Part shown: piece after piece, positions 1-47,805 of the stretch | Layout of the letters: each line of letters begins with the position of its first letter | How positions within the stretch are numbered: the first letter of the stretch is position 1 | IMG/VR virus record: IMGVR_UViG_3300044701_003953 | Coordinates: 1-64,000 of that record | Length of the DNA: 64,000 nucleotides | Strand: one strand, 5' to 3' | Made by a program: the position numbers and the translations under genes | Notes under the pieces: generated by a model | Database searches by the model: none | What the model was told of the DNA's origin: nothing | Seen by the model: the letters and a program-made list of their open reading frames with translations, nothing else

Positions 1-42
1 CTACCAATCCGATAGTGGATTGTATCACAGTTAGTTGGGTTA

Positions 43-131
43 CCATATCCAAACGCACTGGCAGGTCGCTCAAGCCTGCTGTCTGCATTGCCGCGGTTGA
101 TCATTCCGAATCTCAATGCGTTTGGATATAG
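43..131 (-). ncRNA. Long-stem hairpin cassette A (13-bp perfect inverted repeat around a ~59-nt structured insert)
   Basis: atatccaaacgca (45-57) is the exact reverse complement of tgcgtttggatat (117-129); the insert contains a GCAGG/CCTGC stem. Strand inferred from the upstream promoter and attenuator. Confidence 0.55.
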
Positions 132-136
132 TGTCG

Positions 137-211
137 CCATATTGAAACACACTAAACGAGGAGTCCTGTTTCGAACCAGTACCGTCTTATCTCTAATGTG
201 TTTCAATATGG
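137..211 (-). ncRNA. Long-stem hairpin cassette B (15-bp perfect inverted repeat around a 45-nt insert)
   Basis: ccatattgaaacaca (137-151) / tgtgtttcaatatgg (197-211); the stem is homologous to cassette A with compensatory base changes. Confidence 0.55.
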
Positions 212-380
212 TACCACAGCACACAGTCTACAAGAAACTGATTTTGTGGTCAACCATATGACAGGGTCGATACCCTGCCCAGGAGTCTTACAGTCTGCGT
301 TCTCGCCACAGAGTTCATGGATCCTGTCCGCCCGTTTATTTTTTTGAGTGCTTATGGGACCTCGTTTCCGCTTGCACCTT

Positions 381-414
381 AAAACAAAAAACCCTGGGTC
401 TTTCGATCCAGGGT
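381..414 (-). terminator. Rho-independent terminator (attenuator terminator)
   Basis: Minus strand ACCCTGGATC-GAAA-GACCCAGGGT followed by a U-rich tract (TTTTTTGTTTT). Confidence 0.8.
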
Positions 415-445
415 CCTTGTAGAATTCTATGTGTTACAATGAGTT

Positions 446-568
446 CTACTCAGACCCTCCACGATCAAGACGCTCAATCATTAGGGCACTAAAGTTAGGC
501 CAATAGGAATGGCCTGCCTTCGATTGGCATCCTAATGTTGATATGTTTGACAGTTTTGTAGTCATCAT
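446..568 (-). CDS. Putative 40-aa attenuator leader peptide MMTTKLSNISTLGCQSKAGHSYWPNFSALMIERLDRGGSE
   Basis: Translated by hand (below the ORF-track cut-off). ATG lies 7 nt after the -10 box; the last codons overlap the antiterminator strand. Confidence 0.6.
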   Translation of the reverse strand: MMTTKLSNISTLGCQSKAGHSYWPNFSALMIERLDRGGSE

Positions 569-575
569 AGTATCT

Positions 576-604
576 ATTGTATAGTCGTTTTATTTATGTG
601 TCAA
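576..604 (-). promoter_or_regulatory. Sigma70-type promoter TTGACA-17-TACAAT with embedded TAAATA late motif
   Basis: Plus-strand tgtcaa 599-604, attgta 576-581, tattta 591-596. Confidence 0.75.
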
Positions 605-659
605 CCGGTGGGAACCTACAATGTTCTCTATATTTCGTCCGATTTCGAAAATATTTATT

Positions 660-1553
660 CTATTGATCAAATATTCCTAAATTAGTATACCTGTCCTCGC
701 GGTCACAAACTATGGTGACTATAACAGAATCATCTTTAGCGGGCAATGCCAAAGATGCCCAAATATTAGCACCCGACGTGAAACCAGTTTTGATCCCTTC
801 AACTTTGTAGAGTTTTTTAGCCGTTATCTTTGAATCTTTAATAGAAACATCAATCATTCGATCAATGATCGCCTCTCTTCCTACTTGCGGTTCATACCCC
901 GGGCGCCAGCGAGATATGCCCGGAATGACCCAACTTTCTATGTCTGGCCGTACACCAATGATTTCTATATCGGGGTTCATTTCTTTAAGGAATTTACTCA
1001 CCCCGGTGATAGTGCCCATGGTCCCCATGCATGAAACAAAATGCGTGATCTTGCCGCCGGTATCTTTCCAGATCTCGGGTCCAGTTGTACTGTAATGATA
1101 TCTCCAGTTATCGTCATTGGAAAATTGATCTAACATTTTTCCACGACCCAGAGATACTAATTCTTTAGCACGATCTCTCACATCTGCCTGGTCTCCGTCG
1201 ACGATTTCTAGTTCAGCACCATTGGATATTAAAAGATTCTTTATATTTTCATTGACAAATTTAGAAATCACCAGTAAACATTTATAACCTTTTTGCTGGC
1301 AGATCATAGAAAGACTGATACCAGTATTGCCACTTGTTGGCTCTAATAACGTATCTCCGTTGGCTATCTCTCCTCGACGTTCGGCACCCTCGATCATGCC
1401 GATCACTGCTCGATCCTTTACTGATCCGCTGAGATTTTCGCTCTCCATCTTGACGAATAGACGAATGTTTTTGTTTCTATATTCGTCCGGTATTATACGC
1501 TTGAAATTTTTTAAAGAAGTATTGCCTATAGTCATTGGAATATCGACGACCAA
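660..1553 (-). CDS. cysM: Cysteine synthase B (O-acetylserine sulfhydrylase, PLP-dependent); start may be ATG at 1535
   Basis: TIGNT, GSVKDR (PLP lysine), PTSGNTG, DQFSN, HYSTTGPEIW, MGTMGT, IPGISRW and CDREDRY all match CysM. Confidence 0.9.
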   Translation of the reverse strand: MVVDIPMTIGNTSLKNFKRIIPDEYRNKNIRLFVKMESENLSGSVKDRAVIGMIEGAERRGEIANGDTLLEPTSGNTGISLSMICQQKGYKCLLVISKFVNENIKNLLISNGAELEIVDGDQADVRDRAKELVSLGRGKMLDQFSNDDNWRYHYSTTGPEIWKDTGGKITHFVSCMGTMGTITGVSKFLKEMNPDIEIIGVRPDIESWVIPGISRWRPGYEPQVGREAIIDRMIDVSIKDSKITAKKLYKVEGIKTGFTSGANIWASLALPAKDDSVIVTIVCDREDRYTNLGIFDQ

Positions 1554-1804
1554 ATTTTTAGCTTGTCGATCTTTCTTTTTTTAAATTCGATGATGTTTTC
1601 CTGATCGACTACCGTTTGATCAATGAGTATGTCTATCATCGCTAACACATCGGCGATCTCTTGTTCTAACATTTCTTTGTGCGGAATGTTAGTTTTATAA
1701 TGGCGAGATTCTAGCCCAAACCTACGGCATTTACTAACTTCTACGATGACTTCGGCACACTCTTCTTGTAGGATGTCGAGTGCCTGCTGTGTTTTAGCGT
1801 CCAT
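1532..1804 (-). CDS. MazG-like all-alpha NTP pyrophosphohydrolase
   Basis: LQEECAEVI...EQEIADVLAMID (EExxE / ExxD) motif; start trimmed to the ATG of MDAKT. Confidence 0.7.
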   Translation of the reverse strand: MDAKTQQALDILQEECAEVIVEVSKCRRFGLESRHYKTNIPHKEMLEQEIADVLAMIDILIDQTVVDQENIIEFKKRKIDKLKIWSSIFQ

Positions 1805-2555
1805 GTATGACGTGGCGTACTGTATCCCAGAATGCCATCTTATCATCGATAGACTTGTGTCCGGCATCCTGCGCTTCTTGTATTTTTGTCGAATTGCCGT
1901 CGCAGAAAATATTAACTAATTCCACCGCTGCCGGGCCATGATCGTCTGTGTCAACCTCGATATGTCTTTTTAACCAGGCGTAGAACTTAGGTGCTTCTTG
2001 CTCAGTGATGCCTAACTGTTTGACCATGTTCATGTACATTCCGGGGATGACTGTCTCTCGACCGAACGCAAATGCAGCTGCGGCCACATGCGGTTTGCCC
2101 GAATTGATAAATCCAAACGTGCTCTTCATAAAGGCTCGGCTAGCGGCAGGTGCTACTTCCATGGCTTCGTACAAACCTACTGAATGTATGCGTTCAACAA
2201 AGTTTAGCACACGGGTGGGGTCAGCGCCGATCTCTTCCATGGCTTCGATGTAGAGATCGAAGTGACTAATATATCTACCGTCAAAACAATCGCTTTCTTC
2301 GGCCACCATGATCGAGTTGATAAGACGAGCGGCACCATTTTTAGTATACTTGCTGGGTATCCACGGCACTGCGGTTGGGGCCACATAATTCTGCAAGCAC
2401 TTGACCAAGCACATGAAATCCCATACACAATAGACGTGATGTTCCATGAACGTGGCCAATTGTCGCTTATTCTCCATGACATCTGTAGTCAGTAGAGGAT
2501 GATTTTCTAATCGTGTCTGATGTTCACGTATAGCTTCAAGATCCAGCATCTTCAT
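1794..2555 (-). CDS. DUF3050 family protein (heme-oxygenase-like diiron fold)
   Basis: FMEHHVYCVWDFMCLVK, RLINSIMVAEESD, SHFDLY, FAFGRE, LKRHIEVDTDDHGPAA; start trimmed to MKMLDLE. Confidence 0.8.
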   Translation of the reverse strand: MKMLDLEAIREHQTRLENHPLLTTDVMENKRQLATFMEHHVYCVWDFMCLVKCLQNYVAPTAVPWIPSKYTKNGAARLINSIMVAEESDCFDGRYISHFDLYIEAMEEIGADPTRVLNFVERIHSVGLYEAMEVAPAASRAFMKSTFGFINSGKPHVAAAAFAFGRETVIPGMYMNMVKQLGITEQEAPKFYAWLKRHIEVDTDDHGPAAVELVNIFCDGNSTKIQEAQDAGHKSIDDKMAFWDTVRHVIHGR

Positions 2556-2721
2556 TTTTTCCTTGTTCAGACTTCTTAGCACGAGGCGGTTGCAATGTAG
2601 CGGCAATCTCTGCTTCGATGAGAGCACGACGCAAGGCGCCGCGTTCGGGATGATCCCACCATTTTGCAAAATGTATTTTTGATTGCTTTGAAAGTTTGAA
2701 ATTTTTGTTTGGAGATAGCAT
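2536..2721 (-). CDS. Small hypothetical protein (61 aa)
   Basis: Fills the gap between operon genes with tight coupling; start MLSPNK. Confidence 0.6.
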   Translation of the reverse strand: MLSPNKNFKLSKQSKIHFAKWWDHPERGALRRALIEAEIAATLQPPRAKKSEQGKNEDAGS

Positions 2722-2723
2722 TT

Positions 2724-3242
2724 TTATTCCTTCATAAACCCTGAAAAATTGACTGTGCATAGATCACGCATGCCACCATTGACAGTAACGTGAGGTACCT
2801 GGTCGTCCCAGATCGTTCCTTCGCCAACTTGCCAGCCAGCACTGGCGTAAAGTGTGCCGTCTACGGCATACTGTGTTATTTGGCCTATGTCAAACGGAGT
2901 AGCATAGATCACGGCTCGGACCATCCGGCCGGTTTCATTAGGGAACTCGGTACGCAATTTATGGAAAGTATCTGAGTGCAGCGGGATAATCGAGCCTGGT
3001 GGTATCACTATGCTTGAGATAGTCTTAACATCAAACCCAAGGTCCTGGCTGATCTTTTCCATATTAAATTCGTCTGTGTTCCACCACAGCTGATGGATGC
3101 GAGTATTTTCTAAACAATATGAAGATGGAAAGTTACTTCCTTCTTGATACATTTTAGTACCAATAGAACTGACTTCGTTTACACGGTGGTCAGCATTGGT
3201 AAAACGCGATAGATCGAAATCTACCTTGACATTTTTCAACAT
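2724..3242 (-). CDS. Cupin / Fe(II)-2OG oxygenase-like protein (aspartyl/asparaginyl hydroxylase-like)
   Basis: IPPGSIIPLHSD (HxD) and a distal WDDQVPH..NGG motif. Confidence 0.6.
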   Translation of the reverse strand: MLKNVKVDFDLSRFTNADHRVNEVSSIGTKMYQEGSNFPSSYCLENTRIHQLWWNTDEFNMEKISQDLGFDVKTISSIVIPPGSIIPLHSDTFHKLRTEFPNETGRMVRAVIYATPFDIGQITQYAVDGTLYASAGWQVGEGTIWDDQVPHVTVNGGMRDLCTVNFSGFMKE

Positions 3243-3244
3243 TT

Positions 3245-3481
3245 TTATTTTCCTAACAGTTTAAGATTCAAAACGAAATTCTCTACTGTCAACTTTATTA
3301 TGATAGACAGTAGTATCTCGTCTTTATCTTGTTCATCGATATTTTCAAACATCTCAGCCACGCTACATCCGATCATCATGTATGCGTGGTCTTCGCTGAC
3401 ATTTAACATCCCCCAGTCGATGGGATCTGTGATTTCTACTTCGCGAGCGAGATCGACTATTCTGTCGACAGAGATCTTCAT
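3245..3481 (-). CDS. Hypothetical protein (78 aa)
   Basis: Operon-coupled ORF (1-nt overlap with the upstream gene). Confidence 0.65.
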   Translation of the reverse strand: MKISVDRIVDLAREVEITDPIDWGMLNVSEDHAYMMIGCSVAEMFENIDEQDKDEILLSIIIKLTVENFVLNLKLLGK

Positions 3482-4611
3482 CAGCGACGCTCTCTGCCAA
3501 CTCCCTTGTCTGATATTTTTCTTGTTGTTTTAGTTGTTGGTGTGATTTCAACCCTCTTACCGGTGACCGCCGAAGGTGCGGCTATCGGTTTCGAAGGAGT
3601 ACTCGATTTTGCTGTGCCAGCAGAAGAACCGCCCACGGGCATCAATGATACTTTGGGCATGGCTTCCGATTCTGGAGCATAGATATATGTGGTATCGACT
3701 TTGACTAGTCCGCTCATGCTAGGATAGTCACGGAAATATTGTGCCGATTCGCTACGGACATCCATCATCAGGATCCCGTCGAATTTAGAATAGGTCTTGT
3801 AGTTTTCGTAACCAACATTGAGTATAGCTTCACGGATGTCTGCGGCTGTGCTTGACATCAGTGCTTGCTGATATTCGGAATTGTCTGTGTGGTTGAACAG
3901 TCCGTCGGCCATGGCTTTGGTAGTCGATTTCAGCATCTTAGGATCGATCAATGGACGTATGCTGTCTACCCATAGCGCAGGACTGACGCGAGCCGGGATA
4001 GGACCTTCTGGTTCTTTTCCTGTGCTCTTGGTGATGGCATCCACGATAGCCTTTTCTATGCCCGCCATGTCCATAGTGGCTTTGCGAGCATTGATCCAAC
4101 GGCCTCCTGAAGATACTGTCGTTTTGACTTCTACCGCTTGATCGCCGACTTGGATGTCGCCGCCGCCCGCGGCACGGCCACTCCAAGAAATATCTGGGCT
4201 CAAGACAGCCAGTGCTACTTCGCCTGGGCCAACACCTTGGCTGACCAACGAAGTCGATAATGCTTTGAATAATTCGACGTTGAATCCCGGTCCAACTAAG
4301 TCGGCGAAACTATGACCATTGCCATCGAGCAATTTCGCTGTATCAACGATACCTTTAGGAAAGTCTTCTAGGAACTTGTTCTTTTCCTCGATGGGAGATT
4401 TGATCTTGACTATGATGTCAGCGATCTGTTGTACGAAACGCTTGGCATCAGCATCTTTGCTGATGATGTTTTCGATACGTTCCTCGATGTTTCCTGCTTT
4501 GAGTGTGTCTATCACTTTCTGTAACAGACGGTCGTCATCAGTGGATTTCACAGCGGCTACCGCTTGTGCTTTGAGTTCGGGATCTTCAAATATTTGTAAT
4601 AGTTCGCGCAT
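3481..4611 (-). CDS. Hypothetical protein with a PD-(D/E)xK-like motif
   Basis: GPGEVAL...GDIQVGDQAVEVK; TAAATA-N5-ATG start. Confidence 0.6.
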   Translation of the reverse strand: MRELLQIFEDPELKAQAVAAVKSTDDDRLLQKVIDTLKAGNIEERIENIISKDADAKRFVQQIADIIVKIKSPIEEKNKFLEDFPKGIVDTAKLLDGNGHSFADLVGPGFNVELFKALSTSLVSQGVGPGEVALAVLSPDISWSGRAAGGGDIQVGDQAVEVKTTVSSGGRWINARKATMDMAGIEKAIVDAITKSTGKEPEGPIPARVSPALWVDSIRPLIDPKMLKSTTKAMADGLFNHTDNSEYQQALMSSTAADIREAILNVGYENYKTYSKFDGILMMDVRSESAQYFRDYPSMSGLVKVDTTYIYAPESEAMPKVSLMPVGGSSAGTAKSSTPSKPIAAPSAVTGKRVEITPTTKTTRKISDKGVGRERR

Positions 4612-4619
4612 GACTGTAT

Positions 4620-5393
4620 TTATTCTCTACGTTCTATATCGCTTTCATCGCATGCGTCACCGTATTGTATTTCCACTATTTTACAAGGTTCGTCGTAGGG
4701 ATTAGTCAATTTATGCCATTCCCCGCGTGGGATAGTGCGATTCTCGTGTGCGTCTAGCGTCTTCGGTGGCAATGTATACCCTCCTGCCAGCTGCCCATAC
4801 ACATCACATCGTCCGCTAGTGACATGCCAATATTCGTTCCTGTGCGCATGACGCTGTAGGCTAAGACTCTGTTTGGGATTGACTGTGAGTTCTTTTACTT
4901 TAGTACCCGGGACTTCGTGTAACACACGATAATACCCCCATGGCCGTTCAGTCTTGGGAGCCTTCCATTCTTCTAGTATCCACGAGCTTGAATTACCTTT
5001 GTCATGGCCACCAACTCCAAACACGAAACTAAGTCGTGGATCTTGTATCTCCATCTCGGGGATATTTTTATCTGTACGATCACCACCATTAGCGAAGATG
5101 ATTTCGTGGTCTGGGAATAGCTCAAGAGTTTCTTTGATGAAGTGTTTGGCACTACCATCAGCATCTGCTCGATCGTCAAAAAACACGACTTGGTCGACCA
5201 TCTTGAGATTCTGTATCAACTCTGCTCGTTCCCAGACTGGCATGAACGGTCTACCTTTTTTACGAGTCAACCATGCGTCAGAATTGACGCCCACTATCAA
5301 CCGATCGCCAAGAGCCTTCGCGGCACGGAAGTATGCCAAATGTCCCGAATGTAGCGGATCAAAGCCGCCTGTGACTAATACTATTTTTTTCAT
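4620..5393 (-). CDS. Cytidyltransferase-like (RfaE2/TagD) domain fused to a mannose-6-phosphate-isomerase-type cupin
   Basis: GGFDPLHSGH, GVNSDAWLTRKKG, FANGGDR; C-terminal ERPWGYY, SLQRHAHRNEYW, IVEIQYG..ESDIER. Confidence 0.85.
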   Translation of the reverse strand: MKKIVLVTGGFDPLHSGHLAYFRAAKALGDRLIVGVNSDAWLTRKKGRPFMPVWERAELIQNLKMVDQVVFFDDRADADGSAKHFIKETLELFPDHEIIFANGGDRTDKNIPEMEIQDPRLSFVFGVGGHDKGNSSSWILEEWKAPKTERPWGYYRVLHEVPGTKVKELTVNPKQSLSLQRHAHRNEYWHVTSGRCDVYGQLAGGYTLPPKTLDAHENRTIPRGEWHKLTNPYDEPCKIVEIQYGDACDESDIERRE

Positions 5394-6133
5394 TTATATT
5401 GATAAAAATCTTTGTCTAACCACGGGTATATGAGATCTTCTTGCCTTATGTATCCATACCGTGTTATTGAGTCAGCTGCACTCTTATGGAACATTCCGGC
5501 GTCGACGAGATCATAGAGTTTAGTTTTACGAAAATCAAAAGGGTCACGAGTCTTATAGACACCGGCATATAACCAATTATCTTTTCTATAAAAATAAGCG
5601 TCCTGACAGTCAAACCCGGACATGGCTAGCATGTGTATCAAGTTCACTATATTATAGTTATAAAAGGCATTGTTATACGATCTATTAACTATCCTGCCAT
5701 TTAAATTACCCGAATATTCTGGCACTGATAAAATCAACATGCCATTATCGGACATTTGCCGATTCCATAACGCCAGAGTTTCCATGGGCCTGAGTGCGTA
5801 TTGGAAGCTATCATGGCTCCATATAACATCTACTTTGAGAGGCAAAGATAGTTCCTCGAAATCTTTTTCTAGTATCGATATATTTTCATGTTTTTTCAAT
5901 TCGGGATCAAGCCGAGAAATATCTTTATCTAGAGCAACGACTCTCAAATTACGAGGTTCGGGAGGATCTTCTCGTGTTTGTAAAGTTCCCCACCAAAGAG
6001 CGTCAAGACCGGCTCCGCAGCCCATGTCGCATACCGTAGTGATGCTGTCAAGGAAACTGTCGTATTGATAGATAAGATCTAACACATAACGACTATGATC
6101 GTGGCTTTTGTGATTGCTAATGAATGGTTCCAT
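5390..6133 (-). CDS. Class I SAM-dependent methyltransferase
   Basis: VCDMGCGAG motif I; DVIWSHDSFQY motif. Confidence 0.75.
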   Translation of the reverse strand: MEPFISNHKSHDHSRYVLDLIYQYDSFLDSITTVCDMGCGAGLDALWWGTLQTREDPPEPRNLRVVALDKDISRLDPELKKHENISILEKDFEELSLPLKVDVIWSHDSFQYALRPMETLALWNRQMSDNGMLILSVPEYSGNLNGRIVNRSYNNAFYNYNIVNLIHMLAMSGFDCQDAYFYRKDNWLYAGVYKTRDPFDFRKTKLYDLVDAGMFHKSAADSITRYGYIRQEDLIYPWLDKDFYQYK

Positions 6134-6395
6134 GTTGTAGTGTTTCCATGATTACTTTTTTCTTATACTTGTCTAGTCTTGTTTCAAATTGATAACAAGC
6201 TTCTGCTAAATCAACTGACGGTTCTTTGTCAAACGAATATCGTCTTAATAGTGTGGCCCATTCATCGAGTGATTCTCTCGCACATTCGAGATCCACCGAC
6301 GACACTAGATCGGTCCTGGGGCGGGCATTTCTTACAGTCTGCCACTCGTCGAGCAATGATTGGCTCCAAGCCACGAAGTCCGGCATGGGCCTCAT
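6117..6395 (-). CDS. Hypothetical protein (92 aa)
   Basis: Start trimmed to the ATG overlapping the uvsY TGA stop (ATGA coupling). Confidence 0.55.
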   Translation of the reverse strand: MRPMPDFVAWSQSLLDEWQTVRNARPRTDLVSSVDLECARESLDEWATLLRRYSFDKEPSVDLAEACYQFETRLDKYKKKVIMETLQHGTIH

Positions 6396-6844
6396 ACCGT
6401 GACGTCCTCCATGCCAGCAGTCCGCAATCTGACCACGTGACCCAGCATCCATTGTTTGTTTTCCAGTCCCTTCATGAGACCTAACCACTTGTTACGGAGC
6501 AGGGCTACTTCGTTGATGATGGTCTCGAAGTCGATGACTTCGTCCTCGCCATCTACATACTTCTCAGCATCACGTGCGCTGAGTGCGCGAGCATAGTTCT
6601 CTAGATACTTCTGGAAATGCTTACGTCGTATCTTCCTGAGCTGTATGTTAAGGAACTCCAACACCGCTTCAATCTCTTGTAGCTGATTGAATCGATGCTC
6701 AGTGATACCCGGCATCTCTTTGAGGTTCTTTTCTACCAAGCCGCCGATCCTGGCGTCGTTTTTGGCCACTGATAGCTCACCTTCGTAATAATCGATGAAG
6801 GGAGGTATGTTACCTAGGTCTGCGACTATCTTGTTATACCACAT
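6392..6844 (-). CDS. uvsY: Recombination mediator UvsY
   Basis: YLENYARALSARDAEKYVDGE and KQWMLGHVVRLRTAGMED typical of T4-like UvsY; near uvsX. Confidence 0.8.
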   Translation of the reverse strand: MWYNKIVADLGNIPPFIDYYEGELSVAKNDARIGGLVEKNLKEMPGITEHRFNQLQEIEAVLEFLNIQLRKIRRKHFQKYLENYARALSARDAEKYVDGEDEVIDFETIINEVALLRNKWLGLMKGLENKQWMLGHVVRLRTAGMEDVTV

Positions 6845-8119
6845 TTATATATCCAAATAAGGAAACAGGGATCGCCAATCGGTCCCGCGACGTCGGTCGA
6901 TCTCGTCGAGATAGATCTTCATCTTATCGACTTCTTTACGGTTGAACTCAGTGACATCTAATCTCGCTTTCATGCCTTCCATGCGTTGCCTTGCTTCTCG
7001 TTGCTCAACAGTATCCGACGGCATGGCATCAAATATCCTGCGCCAATCATCTTGCCAGAACTCCCCGCCATATATCTCTGGATGTAGATAACTATGTCCA
7101 GTGGCGTATTGGAAATAATGACCGATGTGCCTAGTGTCATTATTACTGTAAAAAGTGATTTTGTCAATGAGATCAGGCATCGTTCTCATGGTCAAGGGAG
7201 TCACGGTCTGGTTCACGTTGAGCGTGATCCATTCCTGCTCGGCGACCCAAGCAAAGTTGCGTTCAAATAACTCTAAATCCAATCCCGATCGTGTATATTC
7301 GATCTCTGGTCCCCATGCGTCGATGCTGGCTGTGAAATCGAAACGAGATATCTTGTCCTGTTCATACAGTCTTTCGATATCGCCGATGTACTTACGGAAC
7401 ACCTTTTCTGGTACGCTGAAGTTAGAGAATATACCTAACTCGAGCTCAGGATTAGGGTGTTCGTCTAGTATGCCGATCACACGTTCGATCAACTCTTTCT
7501 GGACCAGTGTCTCTCCACCTAGCAAGTGTAGACGCCGTAGTTCATGCCCTTTACGCTCTAGCCACGAGTAGAACTTTTCGAGATAGAGATCGTCCTGTGG
7601 GTTCTTGTCTATCTTGCCAGGGATCCAGACACCGTTGCGATAGAATTGCCCGAACTTGACATTTTCCTGTTCGATCTTGGAACTTAGGTTCCCTGAACAG
7701 TATACGCAGGCCAGGTTACAAGTGTTCTTGGCGAATATCTCTACTATGCGTGGCGTGACGTGTGTAGCTGTGGGATCTGTAGCGAGCTCGGGTGGCGTCA
7801 ATCCGGGTATGTCTAGGTTGTGCTGTCGATCGCTCCATCCACCGGCTCGTTCGGTGTCACGGCAATACTCGCAACCATACCCCGGCCATTCACCGCGCAA
7901 CATAGCTTCGCGATCGCGGATCTTTTCTGGCAGATTATGGAAATCGTCGGCTTGGTCCAGGGTCATTGGCCAAGGTTGTACACGGTGGCAAGAAGATGAA
8001 GCACCCTGGTTTAACCAGATAGTGCTCCATGTCCATTTGCTCTGACAGGCTGTTTCGGTCTTGATCGGAAAGAAATCGCGATCAGTGAAGACTTTGGCTG
8101 GTTTGATATTCGCCATCAA
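6845..8119 (-). CDS. Radical SAM protein with N-terminal Cys-rich (twitch/SPASM-like) region
   Basis: CNLACVYC (CxxxCxxC), GGETL, additional SCHR and CEYC motifs. Confidence 0.85.
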   Translation of the reverse strand: MMANIKPAKVFTDRDFFPIKTETACQSKWTWSTIWLNQGASSSCHRVQPWPMTLDQADDFHNLPEKIRDREAMLRGEWPGYGCEYCRDTERAGGWSDRQHNLDIPGLTPPELATDPTATHVTPRIVEIFAKNTCNLACVYCSGNLSSKIEQENVKFGQFYRNGVWIPGKIDKNPQDDLYLEKFYSWLERKGHELRRLHLLGGETLVQKELIERVIGILDEHPNPELELGIFSNFSVPEKVFRKYIGDIERLYEQDKISRFDFTASIDAWGPEIEYTRSGLDLELFERNFAWVAEQEWITLNVNQTVTPLTMRTMPDLIDKITFYSNNDTRHIGHYFQYATGHSYLHPEIYGGEFWQDDWRRIFDAMPSDTVEQREARQRMEGMKARLDVTEFNRKEVDKMKIYLDEIDRRRGTDWRSLFPYLDI

Positions 8120-46638: not shown

Positions 46639-47805
46639 TTAGGAGAACGACAGATTTTGGATAGCAACTTTACCGAGGTAGTCGGCAGCGTTACCTAACG
46701 AAGAAGCTGTGTTTGTCAGCTCAACGTAGCCATAACGTGTCATGAAGCCTACGACTGGCTCGAATGTTGCTGGGTCAAGAACGACACCAGAAGACATTAG
46801 AGGAACATATGGGCAGTAGAACGCAGCGGCGTCAGCTTCGCTAGAACCTTTGTAGCCAACGAGAACGTCAGCATCATCGGCAGCATAGCTGTCAACGTAA
46901 ATGCGCATTGCACCGTTCAATGTACCAACGAACTTGGTGTTTGTTGGAGCTTCGAATGTGCCTTCTGTTGTACGAGCAAAAGCAGAAGTTGTGGCAGACT
47001 GTAGAACAGTCAGAGCAGCTGGGGAAACAACGGCCCAGTTACCAGCACCACGACGTGTGCGTTGAGCGATACGGTTAGCAACGCGGTTGATCAGAACTGC
47101 TAGAGCAGCGTGCTGGTCACCAACGAATGTAGCTTGACCGGAAACACCAGTTTGGTCGAATGTTTCTTGTGCTGTACCGGCTAAGCTACGCAGAGAACCG
47201 AGAACTTCTTGATCGATTTCAACTGTGATTTCTTGTGCCAGAGCAGCCATGATTTCTGCTTCAACGTCCAGGCCATGCATGGCTTGTGCGTCTTGAGCAG
47301 CTTCAAATGTCCAACGAGCAGACAGTTTACGAGTTTTAGCCTCGACAACTTGCTTCAGGATTTGGACGTTGATCTTACGACCAGGTGCGCCTTCCAGGCT
47401 AGCTGTAGAAGAAGCCTTACCATTAGGATCTGTACCTGTACCAGAGTACGCAGTAGCGATCTTGAATGGGCTCAGTGCTTCGTCACCGGCTGTTACGTTG
47501 TCATTGCTGTCAGCGTAACGAACGCGGAGTGTGTGGATCTGAGCAACGGGGCCTGTCATTGGCTGAACACCAACGATTTCGTTAGCGATAACTGTTGGCA
47601 TTACTCGACGGATAACTGGAAGAATAACGCGGTTCAGTGTAGCTACGTTACCGGAAGCTGTTGCACCGGCTGTTGCATTTTCAGATAGATACTTCTTTGT
47701 GTTTTCAAGGATCACGCCCATTGTTGTGCGCTTGGAACCTTGGAGGCCTTCGAGCAGAGCTTCTTTGGTCTCGCCCCAGCGGCTCTCTAATAGTGCTTGT
47801 GTCAT
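46639..47805 (-). CDS. gp23: Major capsid protein (gp23)
   Basis: VIRRVMP..IANEIVGVQPMTGP, KTRKLSARWTFEAAQD, AAFYCPYVPL, FMTRYG. Confidence 0.96.
   Translation of the reverse strand: MTQALLESRWGETKEALLEGLQGSKRTTMGVILENTKKYLSENATAGATASGNVATLNRVILPVIRRVMPTVIANEIVGVQPMTGPVAQIHTLRVRYADSNDNVTAGDEALSPFKIATAYSGTGTDPNGKASSTASLEGAPGRKINVQILKQVVEAKTRKLSARWTFEAAQDAQAMHGLDVEAEIMAALAQEITVEIDQEVLGSLRSLAGTAQETFDQTGVSGQATFVGDQHAALAVLINRVANRIAQRTRRGAGNWAVVSPAALTVLQSATTSAFARTTEGTFEAPTNTKFVGTLNGAMRIYVDSYAADDADVLVGYKGSSEADAAAFYCPYVPLMSSGVVLDPATFEPVVGFMTRYGYVELTNTASSLGNAADYLGKVAIQNLSFS

What the first reader, a model, noticed from the sequence alone, without database searches (positions are those of the whole stretch)
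43..211. Tandem hairpin cassettes with covarying stems and different inserts
Seen: two adjacent cassettes share a stem consensus on the minus strand. B is CCATATTGAAACACATT..AGTGTGTTTCAATATGG; A is CTATATCCAAACGCATT..AGTGCGTTTGGATATGG. The three internal stem differences (TG to CC, A to G) are matched by compensatory changes on the opposite arm, and both keep an asymmetric CATT/AGTG junction at the stem top. The 45-59 nt inserts are unrelated to each other, though each has a small internal stem (B has a T-loop-like GGTTCGAAAC). Inference: a conserved processing stem (RNase III-like, or a phage enzyme) that releases variable small RNAs, i.e. an sRNA/guide array or the spacer scaffold of a tRNA-like array continuing off the left edge.
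Basis: partly seen in the sequence, partly recalled or inferred. Interest (0 to 1): 0.75.

Follow-up and report, generated by a model that had tools for sequence, protein, structure and literature searches.

The report
Conserved-stem hairpin cassettes of phage tRNA arrays
The two hairpins are real and belong to a large, apparently undescribed family of RNA hairpins with a nearly invariant 17-base-pair stem and a freely varying loop, found inside the tRNA gene arrays of T4-type freshwater phages, where they most likely act as processing or insulating modules that also release small hairpin RNAs.

Summary
Two adjacent 17-bp hairpins, B (137-211) and A (43-131), differ at three stem pairs. All three differences are compensated, and both hairpins keep a U.G wobble at stem position 16.

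They are not a local oddity. The same stem occurs in more than 200 viral contigs. About 80% of copies begin with the 3' CCA of a tRNA, and many end with the first GG of the next tRNA. Complete genomes carry 2-5 copies, all inside the tRNA array. Cellular genomes lack the element.

G.U pairs far outnumber A.C mismatches on the tRNA-sense strand, so the pairing is selected in RNA. Copies are enriched after tRNA-Lys(UUU), Gln(UUG) and Glu(UUC). Inserts are hypervariable, but the A insert is 97-100% conserved where neighbouring DNA is about 72% identical.

The record is a 59%-complete fragment of a T4-type phage that starts inside the array. A conserved sigma-70 promoter (253-225, minus strand) lies about 7 nt upstream of B. 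In a relative, 23 tRNAs follow the cassettes.

Best reading: processing or insulating stems of a polycistronic tRNA precursor that release hairpin RNAs carrying variable cargo. Processing itself is not shown. No Rfam family or paper describing the element was found.

The parts
137..211 (-). Hairpin cassette B: 5' arm 211-195, 41-nt insert 194-154 (T-loop-like GGUUCGAAAC at 177-168), 3' arm 153-137
   Evidence: Fold -29.7 kcal/mol, z = -6.0. Covariance model R1 scores 62.1 bits on the minus strand and 44.3 on the plus strand.
132..136 (-). 5-nt linker (CGACA in sense) between B and A
   Evidence: Read from the sequence.
43..131 (-). Hairpin cassette A: 5' arm 131-115, 55-nt conserved insert 114-60, 3' arm 59-43
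   Evidence: Fold -36.3 kcal/mol, z = -5.2. R1 scores 56.5 bits on the minus strand and 31.5 on the plus strand. The insert is 97-100% identical in L182, L008, L112 and L251, while the stems differ with compensation.
225..253 (-). Sigma-70-type promoter of the array (TTGACC, 17-nt spacer, TAGACT). The predicted start lies about 7 nt upstream of B.
   Evidence: Promoter scan. The hexamers and the 17-nt spacing are conserved while the spacer diverges in L008, L011 (TACAAT) and G001 (TATAAT).
257..345 (-). Conserved upstream element X, ending in a covarying 8-bp hairpin (279-260) followed by AUAUGG. Together with the promoter it forms a stem-loop-plus-promoter composite.
   Evidence: Alignment and consensus fold of four contigs; similarity hits.
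1..44 (-). Module Z, cut by the contig end. The complete copies in relatives are a conserved module of about 52 nt: a closing stem GGUAACC/GGUUACC, a conserved CUAACUGUGAUA stretch and a covarying hairpin. Its first GG is shared with the 3' arm of A.
   Evidence: Complete copies in L038, L021, L032, L251 and L104, with covarying stems.
387..418 (-). Intrinsic-terminator-like hairpin with a U-run that ends the unit upstream of the array
   Evidence: Sequence and fold. Conserved at 90-93% in L182 and L001.

Best explanation
A and B are two members of a phage-specific family that I call CCA-hairpin cassettes. These are modules of the polycistronic tRNA-array transcript of T4-type phages. They are transcribed on the minus strand from the promoter at 253-225. 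Each folds into a 17-bp closing stem with the consensus 5' CCAUAU-NN-AAACACAUU paired to AGUGUGUUU-NN-AUAUGG 3'. Position 16 is usually a U.G wobble and position 8 is often an A.C mismatch. The stem encloses a 30-125-nt insert that is free to vary.

In ordinary arrays the 5' arm starts with the CCA of the upstream tRNA, and the 3' arm often ends with the first two G of the next tRNA. The stem therefore ties up both tRNA ends.

Inferred mechanism: the stem is a processing and insulating element. A double-strand-specific endonuclease would remove it. Host RNase III is the obvious candidate, since it takes part in T4 tRNA maturation. RNase P together with a tRNA 3'-end endonuclease is the alternative. 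Removal frees the neighbouring tRNAs and releases a stable hairpin RNA. The loop is cargo. Most cargo drifts or is swapped, but some, such as the A insert, is kept under strong purifying selection and probably acts as a small RNA. The conserved arms also give homology for recombination that shuffles cassettes.

Shown here: the structure, the strand, family membership, the array context and the promoter. Inferred: cleavage, release and any trans function.
For: Family and context:
- 2,821 tRNAs lie in 191 of 217 fetched loci.
- 191 of 238 hairpins overlap a tRNA 3' CCA, and 72 overlap the 5' end of the next tRNA.
- Complete genomes carry 2-5 copies, all within a few kb.
- In cellular genomes only about 5 of 29 pattern hits are real, and all of those lie on tRNA-dense contigs binned into metagenome-assembled genomes (MAGs).

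RNA-level pairing:
- 96.8% of cells are paired, 9 of 17 pairs show compensatory changes, and 0 of 500 shuffles reach the observed values.
- On the tRNA-sense strand, G.U outnumbers A.C by 76 to 13 outside positions 8 and 16. Position 16 is U.G in 149 of 221.
- The covariance model prefers the minus strand for both window copies.

Orthologous A cassettes keep the insert but carry compensated stem changes. In relative G001, four cassettes are followed by 23 tRNAs on the same strand. The promoter is conserved. [quoted passage not shown] RNA-library contigs of 151-198 nt cover only window 1-133. That is weak evidence.
Against: - No processing data exist. The RNA runs are assembled contigs without read ends, and conservation alone could explain why they match.
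- The stem is conserved in sequence, not only in structure. A simple processing stem does not require that.
- Position 8 is an A.C mismatch in 45% of copies.
- Inserts as a class fold little better than shuffles (mean z = -0.38), and 160 of 216 insert families are singletons, so most cargo may be junk.
- No RNase III gene was found in the record, which is incomplete; a host enzyme has to be assumed.
- In the window neither cassette follows a tRNA.
- The hairpin sets were partly selected for pairing, so the percentage paired is inflated.
Confidence: 0.55

Rival explanations
1. A DNA-level element. The arms are terminal inverted repeats or recombination sites of a small mobile or shuffling cassette, like a miniature inverted-repeat transposable element (MITE), a REP-doublet hairpin (REPIN), or the promoter-early stem-loop (PeSL) elements of T4-type phages. 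RNA folding would only be what makes the insertion tolerable inside a tRNA transcript.
For: The same insert family occurs after different tRNAs. There is a presence/absence polymorphism: L008 has the A insert directly next to the promoter region, with no B and with a B-like outer stem. Insert diversity is very high with conserved arms. Homing endonuclease genes (HNH, GIY-YIG) lie within the arrays. The Lys(CUU)-Lys(UUU) junction reads CCAUAUGG, which looks like an empty site. PeSL elements show that conserved intergenic motifs shuffle modules in T4-type phages (PMC4122927).
Against: The strong strand-specific excess of G.U over A.C, and the many compensated changes, are not expected for transposase-recognised ends. 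Genomes carry only 2-5 copies, never outside the tRNA array. No direct target duplication is evident, and ordinary junctions are not CCATATGG. No transposase is associated with the cassettes.
Confidence: 0.2
2. An array of trans-acting small RNAs. The stem is only a scaffold, and the variable loops are guides, sponges or decoys aimed at host or phage RNAs or at defence proteins. A possible link is to the tRNAs that anticodon nucleases attack.
For: The cassettes are enriched after tRNA-Lys(UUU) (72/122), Gln(UUG) (25/112) and Glu(UUC) (28/138), against 1/231 for Met. The A insert is nearly invariant in sequence without obvious structure. One insert family has conserved loops. A T-loop-like motif occurs in 22 of 221 inserts against 5.7 expected. 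The B loop is 17/18 complementary to an ORF at 105108-105125 of the record. Functional RNAs derived from tRNA spacers are known in E. coli (the 3'ETS-leuZ sponge; from my own knowledge, title seen).
Against: No anticodon-loop mimicry is present in the inserts. The single complementarity has E = 0.02 and lies in the middle of the ORF. Most inserts are singletons and weakly structured. The tRNA enrichment is not corrected for shared ancestry.
Confidence: 0.15
3. Decayed tRNA genes or neutral spacers. A leader-trailer processing stem once enclosed a tRNA that has since degenerated, and the cassette now has no function of its own.
For: T-arm-like hairpins lie at the 3' end of several inserts, next to the 3' arm, for example in L033, L079, L166 and L173. 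The inserts are hypervariable.
Against: The stem is nearly invariant across phages whose inserts and flanks are unrelated, and it shows compensatory changes, which means ongoing selection. The A insert is under purifying selection. No cassette was found that encloses an intact tRNA within a true CCAUAU stem pair of its own.
Confidence: 0.08
4. A CRISPR-like mini-array or solitary repeat units, suggested by the AUUGAAAC and GUUUCAAU ends of the arms.
For: The arms contain AUUGAAAC and GUUUCAAU, which resemble common CRISPR repeat termini. This resemblance is from my own recollection and was not tested.
Against: The repeated units are inverted, not direct. The covariation pairs the two arms around each insert rather than within a repeat. 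The context is always a tRNA array on the tRNA strand.
Confidence: 0.02

Closest known systems
RNase III processing stems of stable-RNA operons (rRNA flanking stems; the T4 tRNA precursor)
   Same: A long duplex formed by sequences that flank a segment of a polycistronic stable-RNA transcript. It occurs in a T4-type phage tRNA cluster. RNase III is known to take part in T4 tRNA maturation (PMC4810235).
   Different: Here the stem encloses a variable insert, not the functional rRNA or tRNA. It starts exactly at the tRNA CCA. Its sequence is conserved across many phages. Cleavage is untested. The covariance model finds nothing in the T4 tRNA region.
T4 rnaC and rnaD (species 1 and 2 stable RNAs)
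   Same: Non-tRNA small stable RNAs encoded inside the tRNA cluster of a T4-type phage, directly abutting a tRNA gene, with unknown function.
   Different: They have no CCAUAU closing stem. They fold differently and give no R1 hit.
Regulatory RNAs derived from tRNA spacers (E. coli 3'ETS-leuZ and internal spacers)
   Same: By-products of tRNA operon processing that can have functions of their own.
   Different: Those have no conserved closing stem, are host-encoded and bind Hfq. None of that has been tested here.
PeSL promoter/stem-loop cassettes of T4-type phages (PMC4122927, PMC2839356)
   Same: Conserved repeated intergenic motifs in plastic regions of T4-type genomes that mediate modular shuffling. 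The window's X hairpin plus promoter resembles a PeSL.
   Different: PeSL stems are short. They sit upstream of sigma-70 promoters between ORFs and carry no variable insert.
GOLLD and ROOL RNAs
   Same: Non-tRNA structured RNAs of phages that lie next to tRNA islands, with unknown function (10.1101/2024.12.08.627333).
   Different: Those are large (hundreds of nt) ornate folds with conserved cores. No Rfam hit to them was found here.
REPIN / MITE palindromic elements
   Same: Two inverted conserved arms around a more variable spacer that fold as a long hairpin.
   Different: Those reach tens to hundreds of dispersed copies per genome and depend on a transposase. These number 2-5 per genome, occur only in the tRNA array, and show RNA-strand-specific wobble pairs.

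Membership tests
CCA-hairpin cassette family (defined here) | 17-bp closing stem matching the consensus CCAUAU-NN-AAACACAUU / AGUGUGUUU-NN-AUAUGG | tested here: met
   B matches exactly. A matches with compensated changes. R1 scores 62.1 and 56.5 bits.
CCA-hairpin cassette family (defined here) | U.G wobble at stem position 16 on the tRNA-sense strand | tested here: met
   Both A and B have it. It is present in 149 of 221 family members.
CCA-hairpin cassette family (defined here) | Located in a phage tRNA array, on the tRNA strand | tested here: inconclusive
   The own record has no tRNA but is a 59%-complete fragment that starts here. In relative G001 the orthologous cassette is followed by 23 tRNAs on the same strand.
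CCA-hairpin cassette family (defined here) | The 5' arm begins with the CCA of an upstream tRNA | tested here: not met
   In the window B follows a promoter and A follows B. The feature holds for 191 of 238 family members.
tRNA | Cloverleaf recognised by ARAGORN or the Rfam tRNA model | tested here: not met
   ARAGORN finds 0 genes in the window and in the whole record. No tRNA hit at E up to 10 in 1-3000.
RNase III substrate | Uninterrupted duplex of more than about one and a half helical turns | tested here: met
   17 bp, extended to 18-20 bp in the predicted folds.
RNase III substrate | Cleavage by RNase III in vivo or in vitro | not testable with these tools
   The available RNA runs are assembled contigs without read ends.
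CRISPR array / solitary repeat unit | Direct repeats separated by spacers | tested here: not met
   The arms are inverted repeats that covary around each insert.
MITE / REPIN | Many dispersed copies per genome, with target-site duplication | tested here: not met
   2 copies in the own record and 2-5 in complete genomes, all within the array. No direct duplication is seen, and ordinary junctions differ.
Bacterial Y RNA (YrlA) with Ro/Rsr | Rfam Y-RNA-type match and a neighbouring TROVE-domain gene | tested here: not met
   No Rfam hit. No TROVE domain in the incomplete record.
Any Rfam 15 family | Score at or above the gathering threshold | tested here: not met
   The best match is a chance hit to mir-653: 26.4 bits against a threshold of 77. 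In 11 related loci only tRNA, tmRNA and a group I intron were listed above threshold (43 lower-scoring rows were not shown).

The most novel reading that the evidence does not exclude
The cassettes are a phage-borne scaffold that uses the host's tRNA-processing machinery to release a set of hypervariable small hairpin RNAs. These would be tied specifically to the phage copies of tRNA-Lys(UUU), Gln(UUG) and Glu(UUC), the tRNAs with U-rich anticodons that host anticodon nucleases attack. On this reading the array doubles as a fast-evolving counter-defence or regulatory RNA locus.
Probability: 0.12. Interest if true: 0.85.

Novelty: new variant of a known kind. Interest (0 to 1): 0.62.

Why it matters
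Phage tRNA arrays are usually read as lists of tRNA genes. This finding shows that a large group of T4-type freshwater phages intersperses those arrays with a sequence-conserved RNA hairpin. The hairpin ties up the CCA end of particular tRNAs and carries a swappable insert.

If the stems are processing signals, they define how these large arrays are matured. They would also offer a natural scaffold for releasing small RNAs from tRNA transcripts. If the inserts act in trans, the arrays hold a hidden class of phage small RNAs.

In practical terms, the conserved stems also appear to break metagenomic assemblies. Many contigs, including this one, end at or near a cassette.

Tried and rejected
- Rfam at permissive thresholds gave only a chance mir-653 match.
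- ARAGORN on the window and on the whole record found no tRNA.
- BLAST of 1-700 against cultured phages found nothing. A typical array region matched cultured phages only through its tRNAs.
- Searching the own record for further copies, by fuzzy pattern and by covariance model, found only A and B.
- T4 rnaC and rnaD were tested as homologues. Their architecture differs and R1 gives no hit.
- Ro/Y-RNA, RNase III and CCA-adding enzyme genes are absent from the own, incomplete record.
- Integron attC and CRISPR readings were rejected on the basis of arm orientation, context and covariation.
- The anticodon-loop decoy idea failed: no enrichment of Lys, Glu or Gln anticodon-loop motifs in the inserts.
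- The codon-mimic idea is inconsistent. The stem reads AAAAA after tRNA-Lys and UGAA after tRNA-Glu, but tRNA-Gln cassettes mostly have AAAAA too.
- The idea of a TA target-site duplication or a CCATATGG empty site holds only at the Lys(CUU)-Lys(UUU) junction.
- I first read window 258-209 as a structured RNA module. It is better explained as a sigma-70 promoter.
- A metagenome scan meant to extend the contig to the left found no match.
- Literature searches by sequence and by concept found no description of the element.

Full report
**1. The observation**

Read on the minus strand, window 211-137 (B) and 131-43 (A) are two hairpins separated by 5 nt.
- Each has a 17-bp stem. B encloses 41 nt and A encloses 55 nt.
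- A differs from B at stem positions 7-8 and 13. All three differences are compensated on the other arm. Position 2 changes to a U.G pair.
- Both hairpins have U.G at position 16. On the plus strand this would be a C.A mismatch.
- Both fold far better than shuffled sequence: z = -6.0 for B and -5.2 for A.

**2. The hairpins belong to a large family**

The 15-nt arm of B occurs as inverted pairs 70-156 nt apart in many IMG/VR contigs. I extracted 180 hairpins from 217 fetched loci.

A tRNA-anchored search that does not presuppose the sequence gave these results:
- 307 of 2,781 tRNAs are followed by a CCA-initiated stem.
- 205 of those stems begin CCATAT.

On 46 diverse members:
- 96.8% of cells are standard pairs.
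- 9 of 17 pairs show two-sided changes, in 66 cells.
- No shuffle out of 500 reaches these values.
- These sequences were partly selected for pairing, so the percentage paired is inflated. The compensatory changes are not affected by that selection.

No Rfam 15 family matches. I found no paper that contains the sequence or describes the element.

**3. Context in other phages**

The fetched loci are dense tRNA arrays: 2,821 tRNAs in 191 of 217 loci.
- After removing artefacts, 191 of 238 hairpins start with the 3' CCA of a tRNA. 72 end with the first nucleotides of the next tRNA, and 36 more end within 10 nt of it.
- Complete genomes with terminal repeats (168-364 kb) carry 2-5 copies, all within a few kb.
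- In 596 Gb of cellular genomes the pattern gave 29 hits against about 17 expected by chance. Only about five are real, and all lie on tRNA-dense contigs binned into metagenome-assembled genomes (MAGs), which are presumably phage.
- The carrier phages encode T4 RNase H, and some encode a betaproteobacterial-type tmRNA.
- The window's own phage has a T4-type Gp23 capsid gene at 46666-47646.

**4. The strand and the level of selection**

I oriented the hairpins by the neighbouring tRNAs.
- Non-Watson-Crick pairs outside positions 8 and 16 are G.U 76 times and A.C 13 times on the sense strand.
- Position 16 is U.G in 149 of 221 copies.
- Position 8 is the one systematic exception: it is A.C in 99 of 221 copies.
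- A purely DNA-level element would show no such strand bias.
- The covariance model R1 scores both window copies higher on the minus strand.
- The counts are not corrected for shared ancestry.

**5. Which tRNAs carry a cassette**

Cassettes follow:
- tRNA-Lys(UUU) in 72 of 122 cases
- tRNA-Gln(UUG) in 25 of 112
- tRNA-Glu(UUC) in 28 of 138
- tRNA-Leu(UAG) in 12 of 98
- all other tRNAs in 8% or fewer of cases
- tRNA-Met in 1 of 231

This is striking, but it is confounded by synteny among related phages.

**6. The inserts**

The inserts fall into 216 families among 355 hairpins, and 160 of those families are singletons (counted before 38 artefactual hairpins were removed). The same family can follow different tRNAs.
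- As a class the inserts are hardly more structured than shuffles (mean z = -0.38).
- They contain no anticodon-loop mimics. A T-loop-like GTTCRA motif is enriched: 22 of 221 against 5.7 expected. B carries this motif.
- Some inserts are clearly constrained. The A insert is 97-100% identical in five contigs whose neighbouring DNA is about 72-74% identical. Their stems differ by compensated changes.
- One family that follows tRNA-Lys has two small covarying hairpins with conserved loops.
- The B insert resembles inserts in L156 and L001 only at its ends.

**7. Anatomy of the window locus**

The record is an IMG/VR linear contig that CheckV estimates at 59% complete. It begins inside the array.

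Reading the minus strand from high to low coordinates:
- a PLP-enzyme gene at 1553-660
- a promoter-like site at 604-576 and a terminator at 418-387, which bracket a conserved unit of about 190 nt
- element X at 345-257, ending in a covarying hairpin
- a sigma-70 promoter at 253-225, whose hexamers and 17-nt spacing are conserved in L008, L011 and G001 while the spacer diverges
- cassette B about 7 nt after the predicted transcription start, then cassette A
- module Z, cut at position 1. Its complete form in five other contigs is a structured RNA of about 52 nt with covarying stems.

In relative G001 the same promoter is followed by four cassettes, including the A orthologue, interleaved with odd modules. 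One of those modules gives a weak hit to a tRNA-like Rfam family. They are followed by tRNA-Tyr, tRNA-Asp and 21 more tRNAs on the same strand. L008 has a tRNA-Tyr next to its cassettes. The array therefore almost certainly continues off the left edge of the window.

**8. Mechanism**

What is shown: a conserved, RNA-level, strand-specific stem that is part of the tRNA-array transcript and ties up the CCA of the upstream tRNA.

What I infer: the stem blocks exonucleolytic 3' trimming and hides the free CCA and the leader that RNase P prefers. An endonuclease must therefore remove it.
- RNase III is the natural candidate. The duplex is long enough, and the enzyme is known to take part in T4 tRNA maturation (PMC4810235).
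- Removal would release a hairpin RNA with paired ends, which should be stable.
- In the window, where B lies at the 5' end of the transcript, the same hairpin could also protect the 5' end.
- The near-invariance of the stem sequence and the recurrent A.C at position 8 are not explained by this model. They suggest a specific protein partner or a recombination role.

**9. Rival explanations**
- A DNA-level shuffling cassette is supported by the B presence/absence polymorphism between the window and L008, by insert families moving between tRNAs, and by homing endonuclease genes in the arrays. It is opposed by the strand bias, by the compensated changes and by confinement to the array.
- A trans-acting small-RNA array is compatible with the conserved A insert and with the tRNA bias, but it has no direct support.
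- Neutral tRNA remnants are contradicted by the ongoing selection on the stem.
- A CRISPR-like reading is excluded by the arm orientation.

**10. RNA data**

DNA runs from freshwater metagenomes hold the window. Three RNA-library runs hold only short contigs (151-198 nt, depth 2-4) that cover window 1-133, plus one piece at the terminator. This is compatible with an abundant small RNA, but equally with sequence conservation. Contigs carry no read-end information.

**11. Verdict**

It is a phage-specific and, as far as I could find, undescribed RNA motif family in tRNA arrays. Its function is inferred, not shown.

Noticed in passing
window 1-44 (minus strand); complete copies at L038:11521-11570, L021:75-130, L032:4370-4425, and in L251 and L104: Module Z is a conserved structured RNA of about 52 nt. 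It has a 7-bp closing stem (GGUAACC/GGUUACC), a conserved CUAACUGUGAUA stretch, a hairpin whose stem covaries in six contigs, and a conserved GGUAG. It sits between hairpin cassettes. No Rfam match.
   Followed up: partly
window 257-345 (minus strand): Element X is conserved in L008, L011 and L129 (AAACGGGCGGACAGGA ... GUAAGACUCCUGG). It ends in an 8-bp hairpin with compensatory changes, immediately upstream of the array promoter. The arrangement of stem-loop plus sigma-70 promoter resembles a PeSL.
   Followed up: partly
window 387-604 (minus strand): A near-consensus promoter (TTGACA, 17-nt spacer, TACAAT at 604-576) and a terminator (418-387) bracket a non-coding stretch of about 190 nt. 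The stretch is 72-93% conserved in L182, L008 and L001. It may be a separate small RNA gene.
   Followed up: no
G000 105108-105125 (outside the window) versus window 160-177: The loop of cassette B is 17/18 complementary to the sense strand of a 320-codon open frame on the plus strand (BLAST E = 0.02 for this search). It is a weak lead for an antisense target.
   Followed up: partly
L250:9449-9510 (minus strand) and neighbouring modules between cassettes in G001: The modules between cassettes are not canonical tRNAs, but one carries a GUUCGAUUCC T-arm. It gives a weak hit (E = 0.038) to the tRNA-like mascRNA family. These may be non-canonical tRNA-like RNAs.
   Followed up: partly
L016:5908-5999, L152:11033-11124, L148:6363-6454, L004:4469-4560 and others: ARAGORN calls recurrent 92-95-nt tRNA-Ile(UAU) genes that have a long extra arm containing a conserved CCAGAUUAG. 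This is an unusual tRNA shape, conserved across these phages.
   Followed up: no
Many loci, e.g. L008, L021, L025, L026, L047, L127, L139, L147, L183, L184, and window position 1: In many of these loci the first cassette lies within about 300 nt of the start of the stretch fetched, and the window's own contig starts inside the array. The repeated conserved stems may break metagenome assemblies. I did not check that the locus starts are contig ends.
   Followed up: no
L016, L095, L144, L152, L160, L178 and others: tRNA-Lys(CUU) is joined to tRNA-Lys(UUU) by exactly UAU, so the junction reads CCAUAUGG. That is the base of the cassette stem with nothing in between.
   Followed up: partly
window 660-8119 (minus strand): A run of metabolic-type genes lies in a T4-type phage: a PLP-dependent enzyme, DUF3050, a cytidylyltransferase/cupin fusion, a methyltransferase and a radical SAM protein.
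   Followed up: no
L182:840-1425 (plus strand): A GIY-YIG-like homing endonuclease ORF, judged only by reading its translation, is inserted between the array promoter region and the upstream terminator in the relative G001. It is absent from the window.
   Followed up: no
Family-wide: Stem positions 7-11 read AAAAA in 50 of 66 cassettes after tRNA-Lys(UUU) and UGAAR in 11 of 26 after tRNA-Glu(UUC). This looks codon-like, but cassettes after tRNA-Gln mostly also read AAAAA, so it is probably a lineage effect.
   Followed up: partly
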